Below, in pieces: positions 4,601-54,400 of a DNA stretch of 64,000 bases (position 1 is its first letter; each line of letters starts with the position of its first letter). Source of the stretch: Perna viridis (Eukaryota); contig CM074523.1 of the NCBI GenBank assembly GCA_037379345.1, positions 30,953,678 through 31,017,677 on the forward strand, read 5' to 3'. The notes below the pieces were generated by a model. That model was not told where the DNA came from and did not search any database. It worked only from the letters and a program-made list of their open reading frames with translations. The position numbers and the translations under genes are program-made.

Positions 4601-6421
4601 TGGTTGTTTCTTCTGGTTTTGGAGCTTCGAATTCGATTTCAACAAACTCTGGTTTTTGTTCTTCAGTACTTTCTGTTGGTTTAGGAGCTTCAATTTCAAT
4701 TTCAACAACATCTGGCTTTTGTTCCTTAGTTATTTCCACAGTTTCTTTAAAAGTCTCAATTGGTTTAGGAGCTTCAAATTCGATTTCAACAATTTCTGGT
4801 TTTTGCTCTTTTGTTATTTCAATTGTTTCTTTAAATTTTGTTTCCTCTGTTACTTCTTCAGGAACCTCCTCAAATTCCTTGGTAATCTTGATGGTTTCTC
4901 TGAATGTTTCCTCTGTAATTTGTTGAGGAGCTGCTACCTCAGTTTCAACAATTTCACGTTGCACTTGAGAGAATTCAGCTCTAGTTTCATGAACATCAGT
5001 TTGTTCTTCTATCACTTCTATGCTTTCTTTAAATGTCACTGAAGGTTTTTTAGCTGTCTCAAATTCAATTTCAACAACTTCTGGCTTTTGTTTTTTAGCT
5101 ATTTCAACTGTTTCCTTGAAAGTCTCTGTTTGTTTGGGAGCTTCAAATTCAATATCAACAATTTCTGTTTTTTGCTCTCTTGTTTCTTTAAACTTTGTTT
5201 TCTCTGTGACTTCTTCTGGAACTTCCTCATATTCCTTCATGATCTCAATGGTTTCTCTGAATGTTTCCTCTGTAACTTTTTGAGGAGCTTCCATTTCGAT
5301 TTCGAGAGTCTCTGGTTGTTGTTGAACTATTTCAGCTGTTGTTTCATGGACCTCTGGTTTTCCCTCTTGAGTAATCTCAATGGTTTCTTTGAAAGTTTCT
5401 GTCCGTTTTGGAGCTTCAAAGTCAATTTCAACCAATTCTGGTTTTTCCTCTTGAGTAATCTCAATGGTTTCTTTGAAAATTTCTGTTGGTTTTGGAGCTT
5501 CTAGGTCAATTTCAACCTCTTCTGGTTTTTCCTCTGGTGCAATTTCAATCGATTCTTTGAATTTTGTTTCTTCATTGATAACTTCAGGTACTTCCTCAGT
5601 GACTTTAGTAACTTCAATAGTTTCTCTAAATACCTCCTCAGTTACCTGCTGAGGGCCTTCTGTTTGAACCCCAATAACAACAGGCTGTTTAGGTGATACC
5701 TCAATAGTCTCAGAGTATTTGGTGTCCTCTTTTATTTCTTCAGGAATTTCTTCTTCCAGTACTTCAACAATTTCAGTTGTTTCCTCTGCTGTTTCAGTCA
5801 CCTTTGAAGTAACTTCTACAATTTTCTTATCAACTGGAACCTGAAACTCTATTTCAACGGTTTCTGATTTCTTTGGACTGATTTCAACTGATTCCTGATA
5901 AGTTGTCTCTTCTTTGATATCTTCTGGTATTTCTTCAGTAACTTCAACCGTTTCATGAGATTTGGTTATCTCCACAGTTTCTTTGAAAGTTTCTCCTGTC
6001 TTTGGAACTTCAAATGAAATCTCAACTACTTCCCGTTTTCCAGGAGTGACTTCGATAGACTTTGTGAATTTCATCTCTTCAGAGATCTCTGGTATTTCTT
6101 CGGTTTCTTTGGAAACAGTTATTGTTTCTCTAAACGTTTCTTCAGTAATTTCAACAGGAGCAGGGGATTCTACCTCTGCATCAATTGGTTTCTTAGGTGC
6201 AACTTCAAGTGAAGTTTTATGAGGTTTCTCTTCCTCTGATGAAACCTCTTCTACCTCCTTAAGGACATCAAGTGTTGCCCATTTGTCCTCATCTGCTAAT
6301 TCCTGTACATCAATGGGTTTAGGTTTTGATTCAGTTGGTGATACTAATTTAGCAGTTTCTATGATTTCTTCAACGTCTTCAAATTTTTCAGGAACACCTT
6401 CAGAAGAAGCTTCACTACATG
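1..6421 (-). CDS. Giant exon (at least 6421 nt, open at window edge), E/T/V/P/K-rich repeats
   Basis: ttttcag acceptor at 6422, phase 1; same frame at both ends; absent from the ORF track, consistent with no stop inside the window. Confidence 0.9.
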
Positions 6422-33400: not shown

Positions 33401-36400
33401 CCCTCTCAAAAATGTTTTAGTTTTAGTTTTCACTACATGTTTTAACACAAATTGAAGTAATTTATTATGATTTAAAGCTGAAAATTCAAATAAGATAGGA
33501 AAAATTGCTGCAAATATAGCTAAATCAACCTTTCTGACACAGGCACATGAGCTGGATATTATTTAATTTTTCATGAAACATTAAGAAACTCCAGTGGAGA
33601 CTTTATGGAGTATCATACCTTTAGGAGCTTGTCTGAGTTTAGATCTCCAGTCATCCTTTGGTACAACAGTCAAGTTAGTGTAAGCCTCAGCTTCACCCTC
33701 AGAGTTCTTGGTAACGACTCTGACCTGTCCTGTCTCATACTCTCTCGTCTTCAGAATTGTCATGTAGTGCATCATACCATCGTAGCGCACCTTGTGTCTG
33801 GATCCCTGTAATATAATACGAACATCAGTAACCAGCAAAGACCAAAATATGCCAGAAATAAGTGCATGCAATTTTTTTTTTTTAAATTGCTATCAAACAA
33901 ACATAATCATTTTCCTGACTTCCTGGACGCAGAGGCCTGAATATGAATTCATTGTACAATTTTAATTATTCTAATTACATTTATGCAAAAAAAAGCAATA
34001 AAGAAATAAACACCTTTAAACATCATCCTATTTCTAATCAAATTTTAGATTTTATACTTACAGCAACAATTTGGGTTTCGTTGACCCACCATGTGACACG
34101 TGGACGTGGGTAGCCACTGACTTTGACCATGAATTTAGCCTGATCACCTTCCCCTACCTCGACTGGTTCTGGTTTGAGGTCAATGGAAGGAGGATACCTC
34201 CTCTTCTTTGGCTCTGTCATTTCCTGTTCATCAAGAATCATTGGACTGAAAAGAAAAAAAATATGCTTAGTGTTTATTTTCTGGCAATTGTTATACATTT
34301 TCTAATTTCTCTCCATTCTATATATCAAAACACATTTCAAACTACTTTTGCAACATCTACTCCTTTAAAATCTACAGGATTCCCATTTTCAAGGTTTAAG
34401 AAACCATAGATGAGAGAATTCTTAAGTCAGACAGAGATATCACAAAACAGGTGCAGATTCATAGATTTTTAAAAGAGGAAATTTTAAGGACAATATTAGC
34501 CCTTTTTGCCCAAATAAAGCACAAAATGGAATACTTTTTCTAACAAAGAGGGGTTCAACTGTTGGAAATCTTGCCCCCTGAATCCATCAAAACATTCTGT
34601 TTTTCCTTCAAATCTTTTTCTTACCTTCTCCAATGTTCTTCCATCTCCTGAAGTTTGATGGCTCCTTCTCCTGGTAACTGTGTATCAGATATTACAGCTC
34701 TCTTTCCTAAAATAAAATATAAGATCTTCTGTATGAAGTTTCTTTCCCCTAACTACAATACCTACCTTTTGTACCATATATTTGATATAATTTTAAAAGA
34801 TTTATTATTCCACTATATTTCATAGACATTTACATGTACAAACAAACAATTACATTTGATACTGTTCTACATGTATTTCCAATTGCACTTCTTTAATCAA
34901 TTTTTTTTTCTATTTGCATTTCTTCATGTTGTGTGTGTAAAGATCTGTATGCCCTAACCTTTAACCAAACTCACCTTTGACCTTGACCACACTGGTAACC
35001 TGGTCCTCCCCATACTGGTTGGTAGCTTTGCATGTGTAGGTTCCTGAATCTTCAGGGAACACATACTTGATATCGAGGACAACAAAGCCAAAGTCATATA
35101 AAGGCTTGAATCTGTGACCTAAAAAAATACAATGAACTTAATTGCATGTTTAATGAAAGCTGCAATAAAAGTAACATTACTATTCACAAGTACTGCCAAC
35201 TTGTAGTTACATGTAGATTCCCTATTCACAAGTACTGCCAACTTGTAGTTACATGTAGATTCCCTATTCACAAGTACTGCCAACTTGTAGTTACATGTAG
35301 CGATTCCCTATACACACAAGTACTGCTAACTTGTAGTTACATGTAGATTCCCTATTCACAAGTACTGCCAACTTGTAGTTACAAGTAGAGATTCCCTATT
35401 CACAAGTACTGCTAACTTGTATTTAAATGTAAAGATTCCCTATTCACAAGTACTGCCTACTTGTAGTTACATGTAGAGATTCCCTATTCACAAGTACTGC
35501 TTACTTGTAGTTACATGTAGAGATTCCCTATACACACAAGTACTGCCAACTTGTAGTTACATGTAGAGATTCCCTATTCACAAGTACTGCCAACAAATTT
35601 GTATGGTACTAACCATGATGTAATGGCTGCCCATCTTTGAACCATTCCACTTTCATGGTGGGATCTCCAAATGGTGCCAACTTGCACTCAAAGTGGGCTT
35701 TGTCATTTTCTTTGAGGTTTGTCAGGTCCTTTAATGCAGTCTTAAATTTGGGAGGACGAGCATGTTCCTTGTTGTACAAGTCCTCCTCAGCTGGTTGTTC
35801 ACCTTCACGACGAATGAATTCACGGACTGCGCTCTCTCTGTCCAAGTCCCTGAAAATTAAATAGAAATGATTGTTACAAAGATTCAGTACTGCTATTTTC
35901 AATCTTTTGCCCCCTTTTTCCCTAATAAACAAAAGAATGTAGGAATTAAACCAATGAAGATAATGTTTTATCAAGTACATCTCGCTTTCTTTTTCTTTTG
36001 AGGAGAGATGATCCCAAAGACACTAAAAAATCTGCTACCATAAAACTGAAAACTTTTTTAAAAAAGAACTGAAATTTAAATTTTTTTATTCACACACAAA
36101 TTTTGTTGACATGATTTCAGATATCAACACATGCAATAGCCAGACATGCATTAAATTGGTTAAGGAACAAATTGAGAAGGAACTCATCTGCCATTTCTAT
36201 GAATTACTGGTAAAATTGAACAGACAAGATTTACCAGAACACCAGGAACAGTAAAAAATAATCTCATATAAATGACTATTTTTTTATAAATAGACAAGAA
36301 AAAGGTTCAAAAGAACAAGATTCGGAAAATAAGTCAAGAATATTTAATCTGACATTATCTAACAGTATGATATTTAAAAGGTCATCTCCAACATCACTAG

Positions 36401-39400
36401 AAAGGTCAAGGTCAAGGTAACATGACATTACATGATGGAGGAAAAGTTCAGGTCACATAGTGAAATAGGAATATGGGTTACTTCAAATCAGACAGATTCT
36501 GACATTGTTTAGAAGTACATGTTCAGAATGAAATGAACTATGATTTTTCTGGGAGGATGCAAAAGTATTGATCAAATAGTCAAGGTAAAATGATGACCTT
36601 TGACCTATTGGTGGAATAATAGGAACACACTGTCCAAACCTGATGTGTAACTGTTTAATGGCTGGTGTTCTTATTCTAATCCGTCTCCTATTAAATGAAA
36701 ATCATGAGTTGATCTCAAGATAAAAACAAATAAAAACATACCAATTCATGTATTTATTGGACAGGTGATTCAAAAAGAGATATAGATGTGCAAAACATTA
36801 GAAAAATATAGAAATATTCAAAAAATATTGATGAGTGAAAATGATCAATAAATAAAAAGCAAATTAGTCATAAAACATTCAAAACATCACATGCTAAAAT
36901 AGAAATATAGTAACAAACAAATGAACAAATTTGAGGTTTATTTTTTATTTTATCAATGCATTGCATGTCAAAAACTGGTATCCATTGGTAAGAGATAACA
37001 AGAAGAGTTACATTGCAATGGTAACAGTGGTAACAAGTCATGGTAACCAATGGTAACAAGAAATGGTAACCAATGGTAACCAATTTTAACAAGACATGTT
37101 ACCATAAAAAGGTAACCAATGGTAACAAGACAAATTAAATCACACAGGTTTTTTTTTATATTCAAACAATGATTAGAAAAGCAACCTTGGGAACACAAGT
37201 TTTTTCTTAATCCTGAAATATATAAAGCCATGATTAATTGCAGACAAGAACATTAGTAAACAAGAACACATCTTAAATCGGTTTCATCATAAAACATAAT
37301 ATTCCTTTTATTTCACAGACAAGGAACTTGCATTCATAAAGCAAGAAAGTTCATAATCATCTCTGGCTGAAAATCACACACTCATTAAAACTTCAATACT
37401 TTGCATGTAACATACCAGACATAAACTGGTATAAAGCCAAGCAAGGAACCAAACACAATCTGGTTTACAGTCCTGAACAAAGCCAAACTGAAACCAGTCA
37501 CACAATCTAACCTTGACTGTTCTAGCCTAATTACAGCCTCACTGACGGTGTCAGTACTAGGTTTCCATGGTGATGCAAACACAGCTTCCAACATGATAAA
37601 ATCATCATGAGGATATGGACTCTGGACAATGGATTGTGTCCGTACTGGAATAGTCAGTTTTAGATCTTCCACTGGGATTACTAATTTAGAGGGCACAGTT
37701 GGGAACTTCTCATGAATGGTCCTTGTTGTGATATCAGTTTCATGGACACCTATGCCTGTTGGTTGGTCAGCAGGCAATGTTTTGGTTACAGGTTCTGAGG
37801 ATTTTGTTGGTTTTGGGGCAGGTATTGGCTTGGTTATTTTTTTCTCTGCCAAAACCATTCCTTTTTGTAAAGGCCCTGGGAATGATTGTATTGTTTTCTC
37901 TGTTTTGACTGTCACTTTCTTCTCCTTTTCTTCTAATGGACTGCCTTTTCCTGGTACTGTGACAGTAGTCTGGTAAGTCTGATCAATTGGCTGACCAGGA
38001 CTGCCGTAAGCTGTGACAGTAGTAGTCTTATCTATTTCAGTTTCTCTTACCCACGGTGGATAATCTTGGGGCTTATGTTCATCACCAACTGTTGTTTTAA
38101 CAGTTGTTTCAAATTTCTTGGGAGCAGATTTCCAAACCTTTTTTTCAGCAGTAACAGTGGTCTTTTTATCCACCTCTGTGTCTTTCATCCATGGTGGCAT
38201 AGCAACCTGTGGCTTTTTGGTTGGCACTGGCTTTTTAGGTGCCTCTGGTTTTTTCTTCACTGTTATTGAAGTTTGGTAAGTCTCGTCACTTGGTTGAGGC
38301 ACCTGGCGACCCTCAGCTGTGACTGTTGTTGTGTGTTCGCATTCTGTTTTTTTCATCCATGGTGGATAGTCTAATTTGGGTTGTTTCATCTTGTTGTCAG
38401 GTTTTCTTGGTACAGTCATTGATGTTTCATATTTTTTGTCCGGTTGTTTTTTAGGTGGTTTAGCTTTTCTCATTGAGTCAAGCTCATCCTCAGATACCAG
38501 ACGCAGGTGCCCAGATTCAGTTTCTGAGGCGTAATTAATTTCTTGGACTGGTCCGACTGGCTCTATCTCATACCTGAAGTAAAATCTGTTTGTATAATAC
38601 CAGTAACATGTACGAGTGCTATAAAAATGTTAGTTTCATTAGCACTTTGCAGTTAATTGCAAATATCCATTTTTTATAAAGTTTCACCTATACTGTTGTC
38701 AACACTGCAATTTTATACCAATAGCCAAAATTTGATATGTTGAATAGAAAATGTAATATTTTAATGCATTTTGAAAATCATACCCTTATAGAACTTTTTC
38801 ATGATAGAACCAAAAAATACAGTGACACCTGTCTAATCTGAACACTTTTTAGTTGTTTTTTCTTTTTTCCAGTTTAGTCACAAAACTAGGGACCAACTTT
38901 TCATGATGTCTGTTTTCGAAAGCTGACTGGTTTATTCAGGGTATAGTTAAGACAGGTTTAACTGTAAAAGAAGGGGAAATGAGATTTGATATATATGAAT
39001 AAAATAAAAATTTAAGGATTTTTCAAAGCAAAGTTCAGAAAGCAGCAGCATTGCAATTCTAAGCAAATGGGAGAAGCAGCCTTCCCAGAATGCAAAGCAT
39101 ATAATCAAAGGGGAATAACCTTGGAGGACTGCCTGGTTCTACTGGTTTCTTTCCAGGCTTCAGAGGTTTTACACCAGTCTGATCCGGTTTCTTATCTACT
39201 AATACTGATGTTTCATAGGTCTGGTCTGGTTGTTTAGGGACATGTCTGCCCTCTGTTGTATACTTTGTGGTAGTTGTTTCTTCATAGTCAGTTTCTCTGA
39301 CCCATGGAGTTAGTCCTTCCTCAGGCTGTTTCCTCAGATCTGATGGTTTCACACCAACAGTAATGGAGGTTTCATCAGTCTCATCCATTGTTTGTTCAGG

Positions 39401-42400
39401 ACCTTGACCCCTCTGTTGTTCAATAGAGGTCATGGTCTTATCTACAAGTTTGGCCTTAACCCAAGGTGGGAAGGTCAACTGTGGGGGACCAGTTTCATCA
39501 TCTGGTTTTGTGTCTACAGACATGGATGTCTCAAATGTCTTGTCTGATGGCTGAGGTATTTGGCGACCTTCAGCAGTCATTGTAGTGTTTTGTTCCCACT
39601 GTGTCTCCCTGGTCCATGGTGGATAAAATTGTTCTGGTTGTGGTATGTCCTTCTCAACCTTTTTGTCAACTGAAATTCTGGTTTCATATTTTTGAACAGT
39701 TGTCGTAGGTTTATCTGGAGAGTGTGGTTTCCTTTCTTCCTCAGGAACGAGACGTAGATATCCTGATTCAGTTTCTGAGGCATATGTTATTTGCTGGACA
39801 GGTCCTTCTTCTTCTATTTCATATCTAAAGTTAAAAAGTTTACTCATTCAAGGGATACTTACTTCATACCGAGTGTAATGTGTAATTAATAAGAAGTATT
39901 TGTATTACATCATTTTATTTATGAAATCAGATTCCTTTCAAAAGAGAAAAAAATTGTTTTCAGAACATAATCTTTAAGGTAAACTTTTTTTTTTATAATA
40001 AAGAAGATTAAAATACTATCTTGATTTTCATATCATTTGCATTATCATAAAATGTTTATGCCTATAAAATTTTCAAAGGGGAATAACCTTGGAGGACTGC
40101 CTGGTTCTACTGGTTTCTTTCCAGGCTTCAGAGGTTTTACACCAGTCTGATCTGGTGTCTTATCTACTAATACTGATGTTTCATAGGTCTGGTCTGGTTG
40201 TTTAGGGACATGTCTGCCCTCTGTTGTATACTTTGTGGTAGTTGTGTCTTCATAGTCAGTTTCTCTGACCCATGGAGTTAGTCCTTCCTCAGGCTGTTTC
40301 CTCAGATCTGATGGTTTCACACCAACAGTAATGGAGGTTTCATCAGTCTCATCCAGTGGTTGTTCAGGACCTTGACCCCTCTGTTGTTCAATAGAGGTCA
40401 TGGTCTTATCTACAAGTTTGGCCTTAACCCAAGGTGGGAAGGTCAACTGTGGGGGACCAGTTTCATCATCTGGTTTTGTGTCTACAGATATGGATGTCTC
40501 AAATGTCTGGTCTGATGGCTGAGGAATTTGGCGACCTTCAGCAGTCATTGTAGTTTTTTGTTCCCACTGTGTCTCCCTGGTCCATGGTGGATAAAATTGT
40601 TCTGGTTGTGGTATGTCCTTCTCAACCTTTTTGTCAACTGAAATTCTGGTTTCATATTTTTTAACAGTTTTTGGTGGTTTATCTGTAGAACTTGGTCTCC
40701 TATCTTCCTCTGGGACAAGACGTAAATATCCTGATTCAGTTTCAGAGGCATATGTTATCTCCTGAACTGGTCCTTCTTCTTCTATTTCATATCTATAGCA
40801 AAATTAATTGTTTTAAATGTATTGATATGCCATTATCTTGGTACTTGCGTACACTTCCTTGATATGTCATTATCTTGATACTTGCAAACATTTCATTTTA
40901 CACATTTATCAGAAGATTTTTTTATTTCTTTATTTAAAATCATAATAATTTTATCTAAATAATATTAATTTATTAATTTATCATTTCTTATCTAAATTCA
41001 TTGCAATTTAAAGATAGAAGATTTTTCACATTTATAGTAAATCTATGGCAATAACCTAGGAGGACTGCCAGGTTGAACTGGTGGTTTCCTGTCTGGCTTC
41101 TTTTCTTCCGATGTCACAGATGTTGTTTGTTGCCAATCTGTTTCCTTCACCCAGGGTGGATATTGGGAACCAGGCTGCTGTTTTGTCTCAACTGGCTTTC
41201 TGGCCACTAAAACTGATGACTCGTAAATCTGATCTGGTTGTTTAGGGACATGTCTGCCCTCAGTTGTGAATTCTGTGGTAGTTCTTTCTTCATATTCAGT
41301 TTCCCTGACCCATGGAGGTAGTCCTTCATCTGGCTGTTTCTTCAAGTCTGAGGGTTTCACACTAATTGTCATAGACGTCTCATGTGTTTCATCTACAGGT
41401 CTTTCTGGTGTTCTTCTTTCTTCAGTCACTGTAGTTGTCTGTGTGACCTCAGTGTCCTTGACCCATGGTGGGAATGTCACTTTTGGTTTCTTATCTTTAG
41501 TTGGTTGCTTACTTACAATATTTGTGTAAGATGGCTTTTCTGGACTTCTCCTCTCCTCTACCACTGTTCTTGTTTGTGTGACCTCAGTGCCCTTGGCCCA
41601 GGGTGGGAATGACCCTTTAGCTTTTTTCTTTTCAGCTTCATCTGGCTTCAGTGGCTTTTGACCTTTCTGTTGTTCAACAGCCTTATCTACAAGCTTTGCC
41701 TTGACCCAAGGTGGAAAGGTCAACTGTGGGGGACCAGTCTCATCATCTGTCACTGTTGTTTCATACACCTGATCAGGAGGACCCTCTCCTGTAATAGTTG
41801 TTTTCTTTTCATATTCAGTTTCTGTTACCCAAGGTAGATAACTGTCTTTTGATTTTACAGGCTTGTCTTCTGTTTTTTTGTTTACTGTTACTTCAGATAT
41901 GTAGGTCTGGTCTGGTTTTGGCTGTTGTCCTGTTGATGACTTCTTGGGTGTGTCCAGTTCATCTTCTGATACAAAGCGTAGATATCCAGATTCAGTTTCA
42001 GAAGCATAGTTGATCTCCTGTACTGGACCTACAGGTTCTATTTGATAGCTGTAGAAAATCATAATAATGGTTCTACACTTATGAAGTCAAGTTTTCTTTT
42101 AAACCTAAAATTTCAAGTTTTGCTAATCACCAAAATTAATTTTTTTTTATTAACTAAGATATTATTTATTTTCCTTATCATGAAAAACTGATTGTCAAAC
42201 ATTAATTTTTTTGAAGTAGGAATATGAAATTTAATATTTTTTTTTAAAGTTATATTACAACTAAAATATTTATCTTTTCCTAAATAGTTATATCTAAACT
42301 TATATAAGTAAATCATGGTTTCAATATAAAGATAAATCAATGTCAATAACCTTGGTGGGCTTCCAGGTTTTACTGGTGCTTTCTGAGTTGATTTCTTCGA

Positions 42401-45400
42401 TGGCTGTTTCTGTTTTGAAACTGGTTTCCTTTCCACTGAAACTGATGTTTCATAAATCTGATCTGGTTGTTTAGGGACATGTCTGCCCTCAGTTGTATAT
42501 TCTGTAGTAGTTCTTTCTTCATATTCAGTTTCCCTGACCCATGGAGGTAATCCTTCATCTGGCTGTTTCTTCAGGTCTGAGGGTTTCACACTAATTGTCA
42601 TAGAGGTCTCATGTGTTTCATCTACAGGTCTTTCTGGTGTTTTTCTTTCTTCAGTCACTGTAGTTGTCTGTGTGACCTCAGTGTCCTTGACCCATGGTGG
42701 GAATGTCACTTTTGGTTTCTTATCTTTAGGTGGTTGCTTAGAGACAGGTTGCTTATATACAGCAAATTTGTCCATTGGCTTTTCTGGTGTTTTCCTTTCT
42801 TCAGTCACTGTAGTCCTTTGTGCAACCTCAGCGTCCTTGACCCAAGGTGGGAAGGTCACTTTTGGCTCTTTTGTATCCTTTGTAGGTTGTTTAGCAACAG
42901 AAACAGATTTTTTATACATTATATCATAAGGTCCTTTCAAATCCTTTGTTATTGATGTTGTTTGTTTTTCAGTTGTGTCCTTGACCCAGGGAAGGGATTC
43001 ATATTCAGGTTTATAGTCTGGTTGACCTTGACCTTGAACAACCATTGTGGTCTCATAGGTCTGATCAACAGGCCTTTCCCCATACTGTTGACCAGTAATG
43101 GTAACAGAATGGGTAACAGTTGTATCCTGAACCCAGCCAGAATAAGCACCCTGAATGGGTTGTCTCCCTTGGTCTTCTGGTGAAATTATTGACACTTCAT
43201 AGGTTTTATCAAAGGGTTTTGGACCTTTCACCTCTTTGGTAATGACAGTTCTATTATCAATTTCTGTGTCCCATGATAAAGGTTTATCCTGTTTAGGTTT
43301 TTGTTTGTTGTCTTCTGGTTTTTTTGTTACAGACACAGAAGTTTGGTAAGTTTTGTCTTCTGTAGTTTCTGGTGGCTTTTGTTCACCAGTGACAGTTACT
43401 GACTGGTCAACTGTTGTTTCCCTAGTAACCAACCAAGGAGGATAACTCTTTTTGCTAAAATTGGAGTATACATGGTGAGCAAATCTATCTACTGGTGAAA
43501 TGTAATGAAATCATTTGCCATTTATTTAGTAGTTAAAGCCATGAAATTAAAATATAGTTTATTTTTTAATAAATAAACATGCTATCTTGACTAAAATAAA
43601 ATCCAGAATATGTTTGTAAAGGGAGGTAATCCTATGGGAGATGATTCCCATTCACTGTTCCTTAATTTCAATTTTGGTAATGGCAAGTAATTTCATTGCT
43701 TTAGGAAGCAAAGGGAAACAAATATCAGATATTAAACAAAATTTTTAAAGGTAAGAAAAACTTATATGATTTCTAACTACGGTAAACAGTGTACATGCCT
43801 TGCAAAATGAAAAATAGATTGACTTAAATTAAACTAAATTGATAGTAACTATTCTAAAAATTATCTCAAAACATGCTTAAGGAGGTAGACCTAAGGTAAG
43901 GGACATAACTCTTGATTTCAGTGATACGTTTGTATCATATTCAATTTCACTTAAGCTTTTCAAGCTTTCCACTGAAACTGAATGAAATCAGTCAGTTACT
44001 TTGATGCTTACATGAGATTAATGTAAAATGCTAATACAAACATTCCAATGATTAGTAAGAGTCATCTCCCTTACCCTAGGTCTATCTCATTAAAATAAAC
44101 AGAAAAAAGACCAAATTATCCTCTATTAACACTGACAATGAAGGTAACAGTTTTCCTAATTGAAAAGAAATATTACAACAAAGGGACATAACCACAACAA
44201 AGGGAAATAACTCAGACCTTGGTACACTCTCCTTGGGTGGAGATGGCTTCTTGGCTTTCTTTTTCTCTCTTGGTGACAGTGGTTTGTTATACCTATTATA
44301 TTAGTTAGAGAAAAGAAGAAAGTAAGATACTAACTACAATATATACACAGAGATTTAATATATCAACTCATCTTATGCCACTACATTCAAACACAGTAAT
44401 GATGATAAAAAATTATGTGTTAAGTCAAAAACTATTTTCTAATTATTAAGTATATATTGAAAAAAGACTTTTCTAACTCTGTTTTTCATGCAAAAAGACT
44501 AATGAGTTCTAACAACATTTTCCTTATTTAAGAATATTTTATGACAATCAAAACAGTGTTCAAACCAATCTAAACTTTAAATGTTTGTATCTAGGGAGAC
44601 AATTCTTTAAAAAAAGGGTAAGACAGGGGAGGTAATTCACCTGAATTGTTCATATTTGGTCTGCAGTGAGATAGGAATCTGTGGTTGATATGGAGGCTTT
44701 AGATCATCATATCTGAAAAGTTTTACAATTCTAAGACTGTTTGTCCTGATAAAATAATTATTGAAACCTATAACACATTTAGGCCTTAAAATCAGAAGTA
44801 ATGACTTTCATACTGCAAAATGGTCTTAGATTTCACTTTAGACCATACTAGAAAGGGTGTAAAAAAATTTATTCTTAAAGCAAGACAGAAAATGACCTGA
44901 TACAGAAAACTAATCCAGACAAATACCCATCATACAGTCTACAAAGAATAATTAAATTAAAACTTATATTCAACAAAACATAAGAATTAACTAGAATATA
45001 TCAGTGAGTTCTATTTCATTTTCTATCCATGCCTTGAAAAAATATTGTGTTTTTTAATCCTATTCATTATCCATGCCAGTCTATGTTTTAGACTATGCCT
45101 ACCTTCCAGCCTCATCATCAGTAGAATGAACAAGCCTTAGTGTGGCCTTCTCGGTGTCAGAGACATAATGTATTTCCTGGACTGGACCAGTTTCCTGGAT
45201 CTCATAATGACTGTAAAGCATTATGGGAAGGTCAACACAAAGTACATTGAGTTATATTTAGTTTAAGGCAGAAATATCTTTTTTTCTAAGACAAGGATTT
45301 TTCTGCATGTAAAAGATTTTAAAGAAAATTCTAAGATATCTCTGCAGATTAAATGAAAAAAAATCACAACTGTCAAAATTTTCATTCATGTATTTTGTCT

Positions 45401-48400
45401 TTATAGAAGTCCAACTTCAAGATTATAGAATAAAAGAACATAACTTCACCAGAGCATTCCAATTAGTAGCACTATTTAGGAACATGCCATTGTAATACTG
45501 TTTAAAGGACTATTACTGTATCACAGAAAATTACAAAAAAATTGTTTCAGGACTAATAATATTCATGCCACTACAACAAATCCATCAAATCATCTCCAAT
45601 CAAAACCTTAAGAAAAAGAATAACAGCAAATGGGACACTCAAAATATTATGTGAAATTATGTTGTGATCTTCCAAGCAAGGTATTAGGAAAACAAAACTA
45701 TGGTAAAAAATATGATGAAAAGCAGCAATCTGCAAATCAAAACAGGATTGAAATCAGAAAATTTATAAAATAAAGAGAGACAACCTCAAAATAAATTTCA
45801 CTGCAACAGGTACCAATTCCAATCAGTTTCACAAAGGTAAGGACCATTCCAAAGTCAGTATCACTGCAATAGGAGTCATTTCAAAACAGTCACTACAACA
45901 GGGATCTTTTCAAGACACATTTCCTCATGGGTATATTTTCAAACAAATTCACTGCAATGGGGACTTTATCAAACAACTCAATTCTGACCTATCAGAGTCA
46001 GTGTGACTGGAAGGCGGCTGTATTCTCACCACTGCCTTAGGTTTGTAAGACACCGGAGGCCCAGTTGTGGGCTTCTTCAAAACTGGTTTAGGTTTAGTTT
46101 CTGGAGGCAAAGAGGCAGCCTTGCTTTGCCTAGTTTCCAAAATAATTTCTTGCCTTTTTGTCACCTTGACAGGTTTAGGGGCAAGTTTAGGCATCTTAGG
46201 GGTCTCCAAAAACAGTTTCTTCTCAGTCTTGTGAGTAATTCTGGAATGTTTCAATATAGTGATAAAAAACAGTGTCAATATGAGGGATTCCAACTACAAC
46301 ATATTGACATCCATTTAAAGCTTTATTATAATGTGTTACTACTTTGTTAATCATTTCCGCTACAACTACATTAGTGAAGAAACCTTTTTTTTCCTCATCA
46401 ATAACAGACATTCTTAGCTTTACAACATAGATAATCAGATTTAAAGGCTATTCAGTTAATGCCATTCAAAGTTATTTTCTTGGATTTAAAGACTATTCAG
46501 TTAAGGCCATTCAAAGTTATTTTCTTGGTTTTAAAAGGACATTTTTCATCTCTTGTCCAATGTTTAATGTCATATCAACAAATAAGAAAACAAAAAAGCA
46601 CCTTATTCATCAAAATGTTTGTAAAAAGCGTCCACAAGATGGGGGTCAGTAAAGGGGTAAAAACAATTTGCCTCAATTGTTTTCATTTAAAAAAGGCTGG
46701 AGAACTAACTTTAATTAGCCTTAGTCAGAGACTTCCATGCAAATTGACTCAATTTCACCCAGTTGCATATTTATCAGTGCTAGAATTTGTGTCTACTTTG
46801 TTCATTCAAAGTGGTTCTAACTTTCTAATTTTAACTTAGAATGGTCTTAGTTAGTGTCAGCCATGCTTAACAAATATATCAATAGAAAGTAGAATATGAA
46901 CCTTTCATCCTCAGGGTAATGTTGACCATCTGGTATAGATCTCTGTAGATCTACAGGCCTATTGTAATACAAACAAGTACATATGATTGGATTGAATTGA
47001 ATAAAATTCAATGTTCTGTTTTTCAAATTAATGAATATTAAGAGCTTATTAATTTATAGCAATTTGAATTGAACTGTTTTCACTTTAAATTTATATTTTA
47101 TTTTTCTCATTAAGAATCCTAGATTTATATTGAAAGTAGTACCAGCTATATTCAAATTGCAATAACCACATAAAATAATCGTTAGCAAGGTGGAGAGACA
47201 GAGCCTATATTAGTATATAGGGATAAACAAAAATTCTGGGTCTCCTCTATTATTCAAAATAATGAATTTTAAAAACTTGGTAGTTTGATAACTGCTAAAA
47301 AATAGGAATTTCTGCAAGCCTGAAAGAGAAAGCCTATGATAATATAATTGAATCAACAACAAAACCCAGAAATTCATATTATTACAAAATGTAACCATTT
47401 CAAGAACCACAACTCTTCTGAAATCCTGGAACTAAAATATGTTGGACTATTAAAAGCTGTACAGTTCAGCTTTTTCCTGAATTGTTAACTTTAAATTAAC
47501 ATCAGAGGTGCAACTATCATCAATTGTTTGTTTTTAAAATATTCATTACAAGGTAGAGCATTACTGATACAAAAATTTAAAAATGTTGCCTCCATATATG
47601 TACACCTGTCTTAAAGATAACAAAGAATCTCTCCACTTTATTTAACCATGCAACAACAATAAGGGTGGGGAATACCATGCAGAATCCCACCTTTGTTTCT
47701 CAAGGTCATCTTCTGACACCAGACGGAGATATCCTGACTCTGTGTCAGAGGCATAGCTGATTTGCTGGACTGGTCCTTCTTGCTCTATCTCATAACTATG
47801 AATAGGTACAATGAATAAATTGTAGGGAACTAAACTAGCAAAAAGCTGTCCTAACATTACTCCCTATACTAGAAAACCATGAATGGGTACTACATGTCAA
47901 ATAGCACCCGGGTTAATTAGGCCAAGGAAAAAAATGTCTGCTTAAGGTTACATTGGATGAAAAATAGGGCAGGTAGGTACGAGTAGGTAAAATCTTTTTA
48001 TTTTTATTATTATTTTCATAGGCACTTATGGGAAGATTTCTTGACTAATTAGAAGTTAACTAAAAAATGATTGTTTACCATCATTTCATAAAAAAATACC
48101 AAGAAAATGTGCTAGGGTAGGCAGGGTAATATTAAACAGACATGGCCTTATCAACAAACACACATAAGAATATTCATCACTATATTATTCAAATATTATG
48201 AAATACTTCAGATAAATATCAAATGTCTACTTTTAAGCTATTTGCCACAATTGCTACCATATTTCAAAATACACTACAGAAAATTTAACATCATCATGCA
48301 TGATATTTTCTTACTCAATTATCAAAACAAAATCTATTGGCAATTTTGCAAAGCATTTATAATGCATTTTGGAAAACAATCACATTATCCAAGCATGCAT

Positions 48401-51400
48401 TATGGGTAATAACCTTGGTGGAGATGGCTGTTTAACTCTTCTCTTGGCTGGTTTCTCTTGAGGAGCAGAAGGCTTCCACTTCTGAACTGGTTTCTTTTCA
48501 GGAATCAGTTGTTCTTCTGAAACTGGTTTTCTTTCTGCTGGTTTCTTAACAGGGGCTGGTTTCTGTGGTGGACCAACCTTTCTAGGTGTGTCAAGCTCAT
48601 CCTCAGATACCAGACGCAGGTACCCAGATTCAGTTTCTGAGGCATAACTAATTTCTTGAACTGGACCAACTGGCTCAATTTCATAACTGAAGTTAAACAT
48701 ATATCCACTCAAGTCTTGTTTTAAAATTGAACTCATCATCTGAGAAAGTTCTTTTGATGAAGAAATCTAGTTATTAAAGCAGACTAACTACATGTGAAAA
48801 AGTAGGTCCCAGAAGTCGCAAATTTTAAGGAGTCCAAAATGTTTGAACCTCCAGATTTGGTTACTATATTAGTCAAAAGGTCTATCAAGGTACTAACTGC
48901 ACCTTCTCCAAATTTCATATCTATTAACAACTCTGAGGATGAAAATATGTAGAAATGGATTCTGTACATTTTTCAGTACATAAAAGGCCTAATGATGCAG
49001 TAACAGCCCTTCTTTTTTCAAATTTTAGATCTATAGCCCTGAGGAAGAAAAATGGATGAAAATAGACGATGTTTTCAGCATGCAGACAAAAATAGATAAT
49101 AACCTAGGAGGACTTCCTGGCTTAACAGGGGCCTTCCTCTTTGATGGCTTCTGTTGAGGCATTTTAGGTGGCATTTTAGGCCCTGGTTTCTGAACAGGTG
49201 GAGCTCTTGATGGTGGAATACCTTCCTCTGGAACCTCAAATGCTCTCCTAGCATCTGAAACTGACTGTGGTAACATTTCCTCCTCAACTTCCATTGGCTG
49301 TTCTTGCTCAGTGGGAGGAGCTTGTGGTCTTGGGACCCAAGTGGGTGGAGCTTGTTCAGGCTGTTGTTTAGCTCCAAGTCTAAAGGGGGATATCAAGGTA
49401 GTTTAATGGCAATTATATTTGTTTACCTTTTCAATCTACATTATTCACATTGGGTAAGTGAGAGACCATTTGAAATGAAAGTAAGAAAATAAAATAAAAA
49501 AAAGCACAAAATCATTTTTCAACTGCAACAGTAATTTAATCTTTTTCTTTCAATTCAATCCATCAATGTTCAAGTAAATACATACATTTATAAATCCTCG
49601 TGCAATCAAAACAGTCAAAATCAAAATGGCATAAAACACAAAAATAAAACAGCAAACTCATTTTAACGTTCATAATTATTCATCCATGTAGATTTAATTA
49701 CCTCCCTTTTTGAAGTACCAGAAGACCATACTAAAACCTTTTGTCAATTTCAAACTTTCATTTAATTATTTCAGAAAAAAATCCTGACAAAATGTACATT
49801 AAATTCTTCCAAAGCTAACCTTCTTCTCTTCGGTATTGGTGAAGATTCAGCCGACAATGTGGCTGGTGTCGGTGGTGGTGGTCTAGGTGGCGCTATCTGC
49901 TCAGAAGGTTTTTTAGATAGAGCAGTTTCCATTGGCTCCTCAACATCGCTTAACATTCTAATAAAATTTGTTGATTTATTGTTCAAATTTCAATTCAACT
50001 AAAATGTAAATACCTAAAATCTTCTGAATTGTAAAGAAAGGACTCTTATTGAAAATGTGTCACTTTAACCTTTAACCTTTAACATTTAAAAATAATTTGA
50101 AAATTAATTTGCTTTTTCCCCATCAGAACAAATCACATATTCTAAAAGTTATAACTTTAATAAAATTTATTCCAATAAAAAATTCAGAAAATAAATCAGT
50201 TTATGATTATCAAACAAAATACTTCTGTTAGGTTCTCTAAGCAACATGACAAAGTGTGAAGGTTCTTTAATCTTATTTTAATGTGAATCTATGCATTCAA
50301 TACTAATGTCCAACTAGCTTTGTTTAATAAGTGGCAAATCCAAATAATAGCCTTAACCCCCCATATTTTCTGGACCCCTACCCTTTTCAAATCTCTGGAT
50401 CCGCCTATGTTTCTACACTAAAGATTATTTCTCTACATGGAGTTAAAACTAAAAGAATCAAAATAGACACCACAAGACAACATGCATTGCAATCCACACA
50501 CACTTTTCATTTTGTTTAAAAGTATTTCAAAATTTCACACTTATTATCAATTTTTTATCACCTGTATACATGGCCCAAAAAAAAACAAAGAATTGGAAGT
50601 AAATCTATAATCCTAATAGTAAATATCAGTAAAAGTTCCACTTTAAAGTAGCAGAAAACCATGAATTGTATTAGATCTTCAAGAATCCCTGCTAAAGATT
50701 TTTTTCACTCCATTTGAAAGTAAAATGTCTTAGTGATCAGAATGTAAAATGTGAATTTATAATCTATCAAAACTTGACAAGTACGAAATGTATAAATGTA
50801 ACTCTTTCAAGAGGAGCTCAACAACTGACAAAACAAACACACTGATCACATGGTAAACAACAACAAAACTTTGGGAAAACTCAGGATCTTTCAGTCTCCC
50901 AAGAGAAACTAAACTAGCTATTCACACAAGTTAAACTAAACAAAACAACCAAAACTCAGATTTGAACATGCAAGTCAAAAACATTGCAGACGACAAATAA
51001 AAATCAACTGGGTTCCAGATCATGCTAAGGAAGAATAGTAACCTCCTAGCCTCATCCTCAGGAACCAGTCTAAGTGTACCACTAGCGCCCTCTGTTGAGT
51101 ATGATATCTGCTGTACAAAGCCCTCTTGTTGGATATTATAGTGTCTAAAGAGAGGAAGAAAGGGAGACAAATAAGAACAGAAATATGGATGACGGCATTT
51201 TTTCAATTATGGTACATAAGTTTTTGTCAATCACAGCCAGCCAGGGTTTGACAGAGAATATCATATATCATGTACAGTGTTGCCTATCTAAAACCCCTTT
51301 TTGACTGAAGTGTTTGTCTGTGCAGGGATTTCAAAAGATGTCTGCTTTAGGCAGAAAACAGTTTATTCAGGGTTCAGTTGAGACAGGTTTCACTGTAAAG

Positions 51401-54400
51401 GTAAGTCAATTGACATCCCACTTGATTACACCATAACTTTAGTTATCATTGTTCAACATTCAAAGTCACTCATCATAAATAAGAAAACTCTACATTAATT
51501 AAAAAGAATAAATTCAGTCTATAGTTTTAAAGTATTCCACTTTTATTTTACAAATGAAGAAAATCTAGGTCACTCCTGCACAATTTTCCTACTGGGAATT
51601 CATTGTGTAGGAAAGGGAAACATGGTATTATGCTCTTACACATAATGACATTTCCACTGGGAAAAATAACCAGATCCACTGGGATCCTCCATCAATAGGA
51701 AAAATGACCAAGCTACTTCAGAGATCAAACAAATATAGACCACCCTCCTTTTCTCCATGATCTCTAAATAAGCCTGGAAAACAATAAAATGTCTAACTTA
51801 CGGTGGTGATTCAGTCCTTGGTGTCGTCTGCTGTGGTTTAGGAGTAGGTCTAAGAACCACAGGTTTAGGAGCTGGCTCTGGAACCTCCTTTACGGGGGAG
51901 ACCTGCTTCTTCTGGATCGTGATCTTCTTCTTTGGTTCTGGTTTCTTGGCCTCAGCTTGAAGAACAAACAATAAACCTCTCAATACATGTATGTTGCACA
52001 ATGTATATTATTTTATTTGGAGTTGATGAGAGTACAAGGTCTACAACCAGTCTTTTAAAAAGTGACCTTTAGAATAAGACTATAGAAATGTGTTACAAAA
52101 GATATATGCCTACAGACTAAAGTAAAACTTAATTCCAATGTTAGAGGGTAAAACTCCCAAAGAATCATTAGCAAAATATCATTATGGAAGATACATGTAC
52201 AAATACTTACGTTTAACAGAGAGTTTGCCTCTGGTAGAAGCTGTGCCAGCAACATTAGCAGCAGAACATTGAAACCATGCAGAGTCAAATGGCTGAACTG
52301 CATCAATGGTCAATGTAGACCTGCCACCCTCTGTCTCAATTCTGTAAGGTTTGTTAGGAACCAACATTTTGCCATCTTTCTGCCAGCTGATCATTGGCTG
52401 TGGTATACCAATCACCTGACATCTCAGAGCAACAGGTTGTCCTTCACGGATGTTGAAGTTCTGGATTCTCTCAACGAATCTTGGTGGTTGCATCTGTTCT
52501 TTCTCTGTTAAAATTGATTAAGATTTTAAAATGCTATGCATTTTACAAGGATAAACAGAAATTAAAAATTCTGTATAGGATGTATTACATTTAGTAAAGT
52601 ACACAAATCTCATGGAAATCCAGCAAGTAATACAGGGCGAGTTTGGGACAAGATAATATCCCCAGGAAATCCAACAAGTAATACAGGGCGAATTTGGGAC
52701 AAGATAATATCCCCAGGAAATCCAGCAAGTAATACAGGGCGAGTTTGGGACAAGATAATATCCCCAGGAAATCCAGCAAGTAATACAGGGCGAGTTTGGG
52801 ACAAGATAATATTCCCAGGAAATCCAACAAGTAATACAGGGCGAGTTTGGGACAAGATAATATCCCCAGGAAACCTTTTTTTTGTTTGTGGGGAAAAAAG
52901 AATAATCTTAGTCATTAGTTTCTGTACCCAGTATTTTAAGTTCCAGAGTGAATGAATTCTCTCCAGCTTTGTTCTTGGCCAGACAGGTGTAGTGTCCAGC
53001 ATCATTTCTGGAGGCAGCCAAAATAATAAGGGAGTTAACTCCATCCTCATTTACCACAATCTGTAAAAGGAAAATATAAATGTCTTTATAAAAATAACAT
53101 GCTTAAACAAAGATCCACACTGCATCATAAATCAATGTTTAACATGTAACTCCATATTTGTTAATGCTTTTAAATTATAAGGAGGCCACTTCAGAAAGAT
53201 ATTTTTCATCACAGATGTTAAAAATTTCCAAAGACAAGTCCATTTTGGGTGAATGATAATAGTAGAACCTAAATACTTTTTTATATTATTATGAACCTAA
53301 ACAGTACACGTTCAGGGGTTGAATGTCAGAAACTAAGAGTATTGCCCTCTGACTTAGGGTCAAACCTTACCTTGTGTTGGTCATCATTATGAACCTGAAC
53401 ATCATCTCTGAACCATGTCAGTTCTGGGACAGGACGTCCAGATACTAGGGTATCAAATCTAACAGTGTTGCCCTCACGGACCTCACGGTCTTCAGGGACT
53501 TTCTTGAACAGTGGTCTAGACAAGGCCTCCATGATTCCACCTTCTTCTTCTGGGGCTTTCTGCTTGTCTGTTTGGTCACTGAAAGAGAGAGACAGACAAT
53601 TTCTCATTAAATTAATAGAGAAAATTAGCTGATATATTAACCATTCAAACATTAAACTATTTACAAGTTTTTTTTTTCAAAGGCTTTTTCATTATACATA
53701 AGAAAAAGTATTTCACATAACTGGAATCCTGTTCTCCTGAAAAAATATTGATTTGATACAGTTGAACTGAGTAATCTCCTTCTTCAACCTTATTTCACTA
53801 GAGAAAGACATACATTTTTTTACTGAACTCATTTTCTTTTCAAAGTCTTCAACATTCCCTTGCTACTTGGAAACAAATTAGAGTTGTGTCCCTTTAAAAA
53901 ATATAGAATTATCAAATATTACACTTACACTCCAAGAATTTTGTCCAATGCTTCCTTTCCAACGAATGAAGTGGAATCAATATTTCCAACACTATCTACA
54001 TAGAGCTCACTAGAGCAAGTGTCTTTTCCAGCAGAATTAACAGCCAGGACGGTATAATGTCCAGCGTCCTCTGGTAGTGCCATCCTAATACGGAGAGTAC
54101 AATAGCCATCTTTGGTGTATTTCATCTCATAACGGCTGGTACGTTTGATCCTTTGGCCATTTCTATACCATGCAACCTTAGGTCGTGGTCTTCCTGTGAT
54201 GCGGCACACAAATGTGGCATCAGATCCTTCCATAAGTCTAAAGTCTTTAAGTGTTTGCACTATTTTTGGTGGTGCAGGAGCACTGGGTTGTAATCTGTCT
54301 GTTGTGACATCAGATTCATACTCAGATGTTTCTGTCTCACTTGAGAACTTGATTCGGCCATCCTTATAGAATTGTTTTTCCATCAGTGACTGCTCAAATC

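What the first reader, a model, noticed from the sequence alone, without database searches (positions are those of the whole stretch)
36640..51144. Array of 16 frame-preserving cassette exons inserted in a single Ig-Ig linker of a titin-like gene
Seen: between the exon ending TESPP (51802, phase 2) and the exon starting DLDRES (35849, phase 2) lie 16 exon candidates of 48-1104 nt. All are multiples of 3, all are phase 2-2 and none encodes an Ig domain; together they total 6075 nt (2025 codons). The flanking exons also join directly in frame. Core exons elsewhere have mixed phases. Inference: this is a combinatorial or mutually exclusive splicing module that can vary one linker by 0 to about 2000 aa, possibly between muscle types. 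I do not recall it being described, but cannot check the literature.
Basis: partly seen in the sequence, partly recalled or inferred. Interest (0 to 1): 0.9.

Follow-up and report, generated by a model that had tools for sequence, protein, structure and literature searches.

The report
Alternatively spliced spring exons in mollusc titin
A giant muscle protein gene (titin-like, apparently from a mollusc) carries 13 frame-neutral exons for floppy, spring-like sequence between two folded domains, and RNA reads show they are skipped in different combinations; vertebrate and insect titins tune muscle stiffness the same way.

Summary
The observation largely holds. On the minus strand, between exon 51955-51802 and exon 35849-35614, I recover 13 well-formed exons (75-1104 nt, 5898 nt, 1966 codons). 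All are multiples of three and all are phase 2-2. None has a Pfam domain.

RNA data confirm alternative splicing. In one RNA-seq run, reads entering acceptor 35849 come from E13 (7), from E8 skipping E9-E13 (21), and from the upstream flank exon skipping the whole array (4). Thirteen more reads join E8 to E13. Transcript contigs from three other studies carry E10-E13 at depths like the flanking exon.

The exons are 44% P+E+V+K plus 12% T and are predicted disordered. Most are tandem duplicates of a unit with a conserved ~30-aa start motif and a PGSPP end. Exon order and phase are conserved in several relatives.

This is a PEVK-like, differentially spliced spring segment, as in vertebrate titin and Drosophila Sallimus. 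It is a new member of a known kind. I found no description of it in molluscs. Splicing is combinatorial, not mutually exclusive. Tissue specificity was not testable here.

The scan's other notes (s1-766539, s1-766667) cover this same stretch, not other DNA.

The parts
51802..51955 (-). Upstream flanking linker exon (154 nt, phase 1-2). It ends ...TESP + CC and has a strong donor GTAAGT.
   Evidence: Its last 30 nt appear as the loose end of 4 RNA reads joined directly to 35849.
51043..51144 (-). E1, 102 nt, phase 2-2. Head-motif-only exon with a divergent head.
   Evidence: No RNA data were laid on it.
49820..49957 (-). E2, 138 nt (or 129 nt from acceptor 49948), phase 2-2, P-rich.
   Evidence: An E2-like exon with the same donor phase is present in relative L011.
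49104..49379 (-). E3, 276 nt, phase 2-2. It ends with the PGSPP tail and donor AG|GTTATT.
   Evidence: An E3-like exon follows the E2-like exon in L011 with the same phases.
48414..48686 (-). E4, 273 nt, phase 2-2. Complete short unit with head motif and SPP tail.
   Evidence: It is expressed: 6 RNA reads and one contig run from the head into E4-specific sequence 48560-48589. Orthologues are P0011 and the E4-like exon in L005.
47691..47795 (-). E5, 105 nt, phase 2-2. Head-motif-only exon.
   Evidence: Head-only exons with the same phases occur in L005 and L011.
45989..46240 (-). E6, about 252 nt, phase 2-2, K/P-rich. The acceptor is the least certain of the set.
   Evidence: An E6-like exon follows the E4-like and E5-like exons in L005 and has the same donor (GAT AG|GTCAG).
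45103..45210 (-). E7, 108 nt, phase 2-2. Divergent head-motif-only exon.
   Evidence: No RNA data were laid on it.
44218..44292 (-). E8, 75 nt, phase 2-2. Short K/P-rich exon with a tail-like SPPK.
   Evidence: Its last 30 nt (44220-44249) are the loose end of 21 reads joined to acceptor 35849 and of 13 reads joined to acceptor 38573.
42351..43454 (-). E9, 1104 nt, phase 2-2. It has no head motif, contains Trp-centred repeats, and ends with the PGSPP tail.
   Evidence: Its 3' half is about 90% identical to the 3' half of E10. Its presence in RNA is only implied, by the word share of 0.48-0.52 in runs X1-X4.
41056..42048 (-). E10, 993 nt, phase 2-2. Complete unit with head, repeats and tail.
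   Evidence: RNA contigs in three studies cover it and join it to the start of E11/E12.
40088..40792 (-). E11, 705 nt, phase 2-2. Complete unit.
   Evidence: It is 95.9% identical to E12, within a 968-nt tandem duplication. RNA contigs cover it, and its donor continues into a head start, that is E11 to E12.
39120..39824 (-). E12, 705 nt, phase 2-2. Complete unit.
   Evidence: RNA contigs cover it, and there is an E11/E12-to-E13 joint.
37512..38573 (-). E13, 1062 nt, phase 2-2. It has a head and repeats plus a conserved C-terminal segment, and no PGSPP tail.
   Evidence: The joint 37512 to 35849 is seen in contigs of three studies and in 7 raw reads. Orthologues are L002 (75% identity, same splice sites) and P0004. 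AF2 mean pLDDT is 33.
36640..36687 (-). It is probably not an exon.
   Evidence: Zero depth in all four runs. The peptide is not PEVK-like, and candidates like it arise by chance.
35614..35849 (-). Downstream flanking exon (236 nt, phase 2-1): linker plus the start of an I-set Ig domain. Its acceptor is used by at least three different donors.
   Evidence: It is spliced onward to an exon starting at 35116.

Best explanation
The array is the differentially spliced, PEVK-like elastic segment of a titin/connectin-type gene, apparently molluscan. It lies after about the 11th-12th N-terminal Ig domain.

Thirteen symmetric phase 2-2 exons encode up to about 1966 residues of proline-, threonine-, lysine-, glutamate- and valine-rich, intrinsically disordered chain. 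Because every exon enters and leaves in phase 2, any subset can be spliced without breaking the frame. Each junction re-creates one Arg, Ser or Pro codon.

The cassette donors all read AG|GT followed by a non-consensus intron start. GTTATT occurs six times, and none is GTRAGT. The constitutive neighbours use GTAAGT. The cassettes are therefore intrinsically weak and open to regulation.

Inclusion differs between samples. One run mostly joins E8 straight to the downstream exon or to E13. Three other studies' transcript contigs carry E10-E13 at depths like the flank.

Shown:
- the exon structure and phases;
- skipping in several combinations;
- conservation of exon order and phase in relatives;
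- origin of most exons by tandem duplication.

Inferred:
- Inclusion lengthens an entropic spring. About 0.35 nm per residue gives up to about 0.7 micrometre contour length per molecule.
- This sets passive stiffness and extensibility for different muscles or stages, as in vertebrate titin and insect Sallimus.

RNA evidence (loose-end sequences located in the window):
- The joint 37512 to 35849 is in contigs of three studies and in 7 raw reads.
- 21 reads join the E8 end (44220-44249) to 35849.
- 13 reads join the E8 end to 38573.
- 4 reads join the upstream exon end (51802-51831) to 35849.
- Introns have zero depth.
- In X22, depth is 26 on the flank, 11-24 on E13 and about 1-6 on E10-E12. 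In X1, X2 and X4, depth on E10-E13 is like that on the flank.
- All first mates lie on the + strand, which fits a minus-strand RNA.

Protein character:
- Composition is P 13.4, T 11.8, K 11.4, E 10.8, V 8.1%. P+E+V+K is 43.7%, above the 40% cut-off used for PEVK in 10.1101/2024.09.30.615857.
- No Pfam family matches.
- AF2 mean pLDDT is 33.

Gene context:
- I-set Ig domains lie on both flanks.
- Fn3 and I-set exons lie on the same strand about 110 kb downstream.
- No Ig-like ORF was found from about 4.5 kb to 40 kb beyond the window's right (5') end.

Duplication and conservation:
- Duplication is shown.
- Relatives keep exon order and phase.

Donor comparison.
Against: - Tissue or stage of the runs is unknown, so muscle-type regulation is not shown.
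- E1-E3 and E5-E7 have no RNA evidence here. The single read-laying run covered only 35600-41599. Relatives conserve E2, E3, E5 and E6; E1 and E7 rest on splice sites and the head motif alone.
- E11 and E12 are too alike for contig joints to tell them apart.
- Contig depths are inflated by shared repeats.
- The AF2 run used a shallow alignment of 8 sequences, so its low confidence is weak evidence of disorder.
- The strongly conserved head motif suggests more than a passive spring.
- Elasticity itself is untested.
Confidence: 0.75

Rival explanations
1. The array is a splice-tunable set of docking sites rather than, or as well as, a spring. Each unit brings one copy of the conserved ~30-aa start motif and one PxxPxR-like tail (PGSPPR). 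Splicing would then set how many copies of a binding site for a sarcomere or dense-body partner the protein carries. This would be analogous to the variable number of alpha-actinin-binding Z-repeats in vertebrate titin.
For: - The head motif has 10 invariant residues across 8 paralogues and 4 orthologous copies.
- Among the 8 paralogues, 9 of the 10 invariant residues are encoded by more than one codon, so selection acts on the protein.
- The rest of each exon diverges freely.
- In its own 723-Mb genome the motif was found only in this array.
- A distant ORF carries three head-like motifs (L003).
- The array lies in the N-terminal Ig region.
Against: - No partner is known.
- No family, atlas or structure match was found.
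- The head is not confidently folded in the AF2 model.
- The SH3-ligand reading of the tail is from memory only.
- The bulk of the residues (E9-E13) is repeat-rich, low-complexity chain typical of springs.
Confidence: 0.25
2. All cassettes are constitutively included. The uniform phase is only a by-product of tandem duplication, and the skipping reads are splicing noise.
For: - Most exons are duplicates of one unit, so equal phase needs no selection for splicing flexibility.
- Contigs of three studies show the fully included chain E10-E13.
Against: - In run X22 the skipping joints outnumber the inclusion joint at acceptor 35849: 21 + 4 reads against 7.
- In the same run E10-E12 depth is about 5-20% of the flank depth.
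- The non-duplicate exons E2, E6 and E8 are also phase 2-2.
Confidence: 0.04
3. The exons are spliced in a mutually exclusive way, one unit chosen per transcript, as in Dscam or the insect myosin heavy-chain alternative exons.
For: E11 and E12 are near-identical neighbours of equal length.
Against: - Contigs show tail-to-head junctions: E10 to E11/E12, the E11 donor continuing into a head start, and E11/E12 to E13. Units are therefore included in series.
- No intronic inverted repeats of 40 nt or more were found that could act as docking or selector pairs.
- Exon sizes range from 75 to 1104 nt.
Confidence: 0.03

Closest known systems
Vertebrate titin I-band spring (PEVK and differentially spliced tandem-Ig/N2 region)
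   Same: - Disordered P/E/V/K-rich sequence between Ig domains.
- Encoded by many symmetric exons that arose by tandem duplication.
- Exons are skipped in varying numbers to set spring length (PMC6469411, PMC9222585, PMC3575840).
   Different: - There is no sequence similarity. There are no 28-residue PPAK or poly-E motifs.
- Exons here are few and mostly large (up to 1104 nt), against more than 100 small ones.
- Threonine and Trp-centred repeats dominate.
- Each unit begins with a conserved ~30-aa motif and ends in PGSPP.
- The array lies nearer the N-terminus, upstream of further Ig domains and of giant E/T/V/P/K-rich exons.
- The regulator is unknown. RBM20 is described as vertebrate-specific in PMC6279932.
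Drosophila Sallimus (Sls, I-band titin) PEVK exons
   Same: - An invertebrate I-band titin.
- Its PEVK-rich exons are removed in flight muscle, partly kept in leg muscle and fully kept in larval muscle.
- This sets I-band and sarcomere length (10.1101/2024.09.30.615857).
- It also has a few very large exons.
   Different: - Sls lacks Fn3-kinase A-band parts. This gene appears to continue into an Fn3 rod (scan note s1-755832).
- The repeat families are unrelated.
- Muscle-type dependence is not shown here.
Vertebrate titin Z-repeats
   Same: A short conserved motif, one per exon, lies in the N-terminal part of titin, and its copy number is varied by alternative splicing. This comparison is from my own knowledge and was not checked in a paper here.
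   Different: - Z-repeats are 45-residue helical alpha-actinin-binding motifs.
- The head motif here has a strand-like pattern, no detectable similarity and no known partner.
Scallop 'titin isoforms' reported by proteomics and transcriptomics
   Same: [quoted passage not shown]
   Different: That paper gives no exon structure and does not locate the variable region. This array could be one source of such isoforms, but the species identity of this window is unknown.

Membership tests
Titin/connectin-Sallimus family of giant sarcomeric Ig proteins | Long tandem arrays of I-set Ig domains joined by short linkers | tested here: met
   - I-set hits on both flanking exons.
- Many Ig-like ORFs on the minus strand across the window and within 4.5 kb upstream.
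Titin/connectin-Sallimus family of giant sarcomeric Ig proteins | PEVK-type disordered elastic region (more than 40% P+E+V+K in long windows) | tested here: met
   - The array is 43.7% PEVK, and 41-54% in each of E2-E4, E6 and E9-E13.
- AF2 mean pLDDT is 33.
- Further E/T/V/P/K-rich giant exons lie at 16630-13043, 10071-8320 and 6437-3.
Titin/connectin-Sallimus family of giant sarcomeric Ig proteins | A-band part with Fn3 (and Ig) domains and a C-terminal kinase in the same gene (titin proper, as opposed to Sallimus) | tested here: inconclusive
   - Four Fn3 exons and one I-set exon lie on the same strand about 110-118 kb downstream.
- Continuity of the transcript and the kinase were not checked here. 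Scan note s1-755832 reports them.
Titin/connectin-Sallimus family of giant sarcomeric Ig proteins | Expression in muscle and location in the sarcomere | not testable with these tools
   Run labels are coded and carry no tissue.
Differentially spliced titin spring (cassette-exon module) | Exons symmetric and of one phase, so that any subset keeps the frame | tested here: met
   13 of 13 exons are phase 2-2. The phase is conserved in relatives.
Differentially spliced titin spring (cassette-exon module) | Different exon subsets actually present in mRNA | tested here: met
   Four junction classes are seen in raw reads and contigs.
Differentially spliced titin spring (cassette-exon module) | Inclusion depends on muscle type or stage and changes passive mechanics | not testable with these tools
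   Inclusion differs between runs, but tissues are unknown and no mechanics are available.
Vertebrate PEVK repeat families (PPAK, poly-E) | 28-residue PPAK repeats or E-rich motifs detectable by sequence | tested here: not met
   - No Pfam hit at E <= 1 on eight cassette exons.
- Only 8 hits in 1.84 billion representatives, all lineage-restricted fragments.
Mutually exclusive exon clusters (Dscam-type) | Only one exon of the cluster per transcript, with competing intronic RNA pairings | tested here: not met
   Serial junctions are seen. No inverted repeats of 40 nt or more were found.

The most novel reading that the evidence does not exclude
The cassettes are not only spring length. Each unit delivers one copy of a lineage-specific, protein-level-conserved ~30-residue motif, and often a PxxPxR-like tail. 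Alternative splicing would then set the valency of a docking array on titin near the Z-disc/dense-body end. That would link titin to a partner in a dose that differs between fast striated and catch-type muscles.
Probability: 0.2. Interest if true: 0.65.

Novelty: new member of a known kind. Interest (0 to 1): 0.4.

Why it matters
Molluscs build very different muscles from similar parts: fast striated, obliquely striated and catch smooth muscle. How their passive elasticity is tuned is little known.

This locus gives a concrete, compact and experimentally tractable module: two flanking exons, 13 cassettes and 0 to about 1966 residues. It could explain titin isoform diversity in these muscles.

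It also shows that the same solution, symmetric duplicated exons encoding disordered chain and skipped in varying numbers, has been reached with unrelated sequence in a third major animal lineage.

The principle itself is well known from vertebrates and insects, so the finding is a useful annotation rather than a surprise.

Tried and rejected
- **Homologue searches.**
  - Searches with E10, E4 and E13 returned only short genomic ORF fragments from unnamed relatives.
  - No annotated full-length protein or spliced isoform was found, so isoform models could not be compared.
  - The length window of the search for homologous proteins excludes giant proteins.
- **ESM Atlas with E4.** No usable hit.
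- **Pfam.** Nothing on the cassette exons.
- **AF2 on E13.** No confident fold.
- **Intronic pairing.** A search for inverted repeats that could pair introns found none of 40 nt or more.
- **E11 versus E12.**
  - I tried to tell E10-to-E11 from E10-to-E12, and E11-to-E13 from E12-to-E13, from the contig joints.
  - I rejected this because the short sides (19-32 nt) are identical in E11 and E12.
  - 36687-36640 has no RNA cover.
  - Other short phase 2-2 candidates (for example 44784-44641, 50612-50562, 51715-51650) are not PEVK-like and are within chance expectation.
- **Literature.** Searches for a mollusc or annelid titin spring-exon description found none in the held library.
- **Species.** It could not be established; tool labels are coded.
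- **Joined model.**
  - All searches were exon by exon, by reference.


Full report
**What is there**

The window carries the 5' part of a giant gene on the minus strand.
- I-set Ig exons run from beyond 64000 down to about 17000. Very large E/T/V/P/K-rich exons follow at 16630-13043, 10071-8320 and 6437-3.
- Ig-like ORFs continue for only about 4.5 kb past the window's right end. None was found in the next 35 kb, so the array sits after roughly the 11th-12th Ig domain from the N-terminus.
- Fn3 and I-set exons lie on the same strand about 110-118 kb downstream. This agrees with scan note s1-755832, which calls that stretch the 3' half of a mollusc titin. I did not prove transcript continuity, the kinase or the species.

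**Checking the observation**

The upstream flank exon is 51955-51802. It is 154 nt, phase 1-2, and has donor CC|GTAAGT. The downstream flank exon is 35849-35614. It is 236 nt, phase 2-1, and holds a linker plus the start of an Ig domain.

Between them I recover 13 exons with AG acceptors and GT donors (coordinates under parts). They range from 75 to 1104 nt and total 5898 nt, or 1966 codons. All are multiples of three and all are phase 2-2. None of the eight scanned has a Pfam match at E <= 1.

- The candidate 36687-36640 has zero RNA depth in four runs.
- Two more candidates (129 nt together) could not be identified.
- Short phase 2-2 candidates with non-PEVK-like peptides arise by chance in these introns.

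The claim that core exons have mixed phases holds for both flanks and for other neighbours.

**RNA evidence**

One call laid three transcript-contig runs from three studies (X1, X2, X4) and one raw-read RNA-seq run (X22) on 35600-41599.
- Introns have no depth, and the joints fall exactly on the predicted splice sites.
- The joint E13 (37512) to 35849 is present in all four runs, with 7 reads in X22.
- I located the 30-nt loose-end consensus sequences in the window.
  - 21 reads at 35849/35851 continue into 44220-44249, the end of E8.
  - 13 reads at acceptor 38573 continue into the same E8 end.
  - 4 reads at 35849 continue into 51802-51831, the end of the upstream flank exon. This is complete skipping of the array.
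  - 6 reads and one contig leave the E13 head for 48560-48589. These are really E4 transcripts.
- In X22, depth is 26 on the flank exon, 11-24 on E13 and about 1-6 on E10-E12.
- In X1, X2 and X4, E10-E13 have depths like the flank. Their contigs join E10 to an E11/E12 start, the E11 donor to a head start, and an E11/E12 end to E13.

Units are therefore included in series in some samples and skipped as blocks in another. This is combinatorial cassette splicing, not mutual exclusion.

Three limits apply.
- E11 and E12 are 95.9% identical, so joints involving them cannot be assigned.
- E1-E3 and E5-E7 were outside the stretch laid.
- E9 is only implied, by the word shares of 0.48-0.52.

**Anatomy and origin**

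- Eight exons (E1, E4, E5, E7, E10-E13) begin with a ~30-residue motif with consensus YEIExEGPVQEISYASETESGYLRLV.
- The motif has ten invariant residues across 8 paralogues and 4 copies from relatives. Among the 8 paralogues, nine of these residues are encoded by more than one codon. The conservation is therefore at the protein level.
- Six exons (E3, E4, E9-E12) end in ...SPP + AG with the same unusual donor, AG|GTTATT.
- E9-E13 contain about 20 Trp-centred repeats of the type PPWVKDTE...TTVT...TYETSV.
- E11 and E12, each with its intron, form a 968-nt tandem duplication. The 3' halves of E9 and E10 are about 90% identical.
- The uniform phase is thus largely inherited by duplication. The unrelated exons E2, E6 and E8 share it too.
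- No cassette donor matches GTRAGT. The constitutive neighbours mostly use GTAAGT. Weak donors fit regulated exons.

**Conservation**

The family is lineage-restricted. There were 8 hits among 1.84 billion representatives, all of them short genomic ORFs.

In its own 723-Mb genome, a search with E4 matched only exons of this array.

Contigs from relatives show the following.
- An E13 orthologue with a head and the same splice sites (L002).
- E4-like, E5-like and E6-like exons in the same order (L005).
- E2-like, E3-like and head-only exons in order (L011).
- All have acceptors and donors in phase 2.
- In one more distant relative, a single 1.6-kb exon starts like E9 and ends like E13, with no internal tail/head module (L001).

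**Character of the protein**

- Composition is P 13.4, T 11.8, K 11.4, E 10.8 and V 8.1%.
- P+E+V+K is 43.7%, above the 40% threshold that 10.1101/2024.09.30.615857 uses to call PEVK.
- AF2 on E13 with an 8-sequence alignment gives mean pLDDT 33 and no confident segment. This is consistent with disorder, but the alignment is shallow.

**Interpretation**

The best reading is a PEVK-like spring segment whose length is set by cassette splicing, from 0 to about 1966 residues. At 0.35 nm per residue (the figure used in the Sallimus preprint), that is up to about 0.7 micrometre of contour length.

Structure, phases, skipping and conservation are shown. Elastic function and muscle-type regulation are inferred by analogy.

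The conserved head motif hints at a second role as a docking site whose copy number is spliced. I rate this at about 0.2-0.25, and it does not exclude the spring role.

**Comparison with what is known**

- Human TTN has 85% symmetric exons (PMC9222585). Its PEVK length is varied by splicing and evolves by exon duplication (PMC6469411, PMC3575840).
- Drosophila sls removes its PEVK exons in flight muscle and keeps them in larval muscle (10.1101/2024.09.30.615857). The same preprint notes two titins with "mixed" features in molluscs.
- A scallop study only surmised titin alternative splicing (PMC5963113).
- I found no description of this array or its motifs in the held library.

It is therefore a new member of a known kind.

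**Constraints observed**

All searches were made exon by exon, by reference. 

Noticed in passing
L001:411-2039 (relative) versus window 43454-42351 (E9) and 38573-37512 (E13): In a more distant relative, one uninterrupted 1.6-kb exon starts like E9 and ends like E13. It has no PGSPP tail, intron or head module inside. Either this species gained four tail-intron-head modules and units E10-E12 inside an ancestral exon, or the relative lost them.
   Followed up: partly
L003:104-577: A 634-nt metagenome contig from an unknown, more distant organism encodes three head-like motifs (GPVQMISYASDTESGSLRL...) within one open frame. They are not at exon starts, so the motif predates its exon-initial position here.
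   Followed up: no
window 39120-41055: E11 and E12, each with its intron, form a 968-nt tandem duplication. The exons are 95.9% identical (10 synonymous and 15 non-synonymous codon differences), while the introns are clearly less alike.
   Followed up: partly
window 37512-37700 (end of E13): The last ~60 residues of E13 (...PYPHDDFIMLEAVFASPWKPSTDTVSEAVIRLEQS) are the best-conserved non-head segment across relatives (P0004, P0005). They are unlike the rest of the array. AF2 gives them no confident fold.
   Followed up: partly
window 52594-53050 and 32889-33212: Intronic minisatellites lie inside the gene: about five tandem copies of a ~51-nt unit in one stretch, and about seven copies of a ~42-nt unit in the other. 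They read as long open frames on the minus strand but are not PEVK-like or Ig-like.
   Followed up: no
window 35087-35116: Loose ends of RNA reads and contigs show that exon 35849-35614 is spliced to a next exon starting at 35116, across an intron of about 500 nt.
   Followed up: partly
window 3-6437, 8320-10071, 13043-16630: Three very large open exons on the minus strand encode E/T/V/P/K-rich repeats, for example repeated EETQPSEVPIEETKPEVE units. They look like a second and much larger PEVK-like region downstream of the cassette array.
   Followed up: no
L013-L016 (G000:C13:31017678-31057677): Ig-like ORFs on the minus strand stop about 4.5 kb beyond the window's right end. None was found in the next 35 kb, so the gene's 5' end is probably close to the window.
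   Followed up: partly
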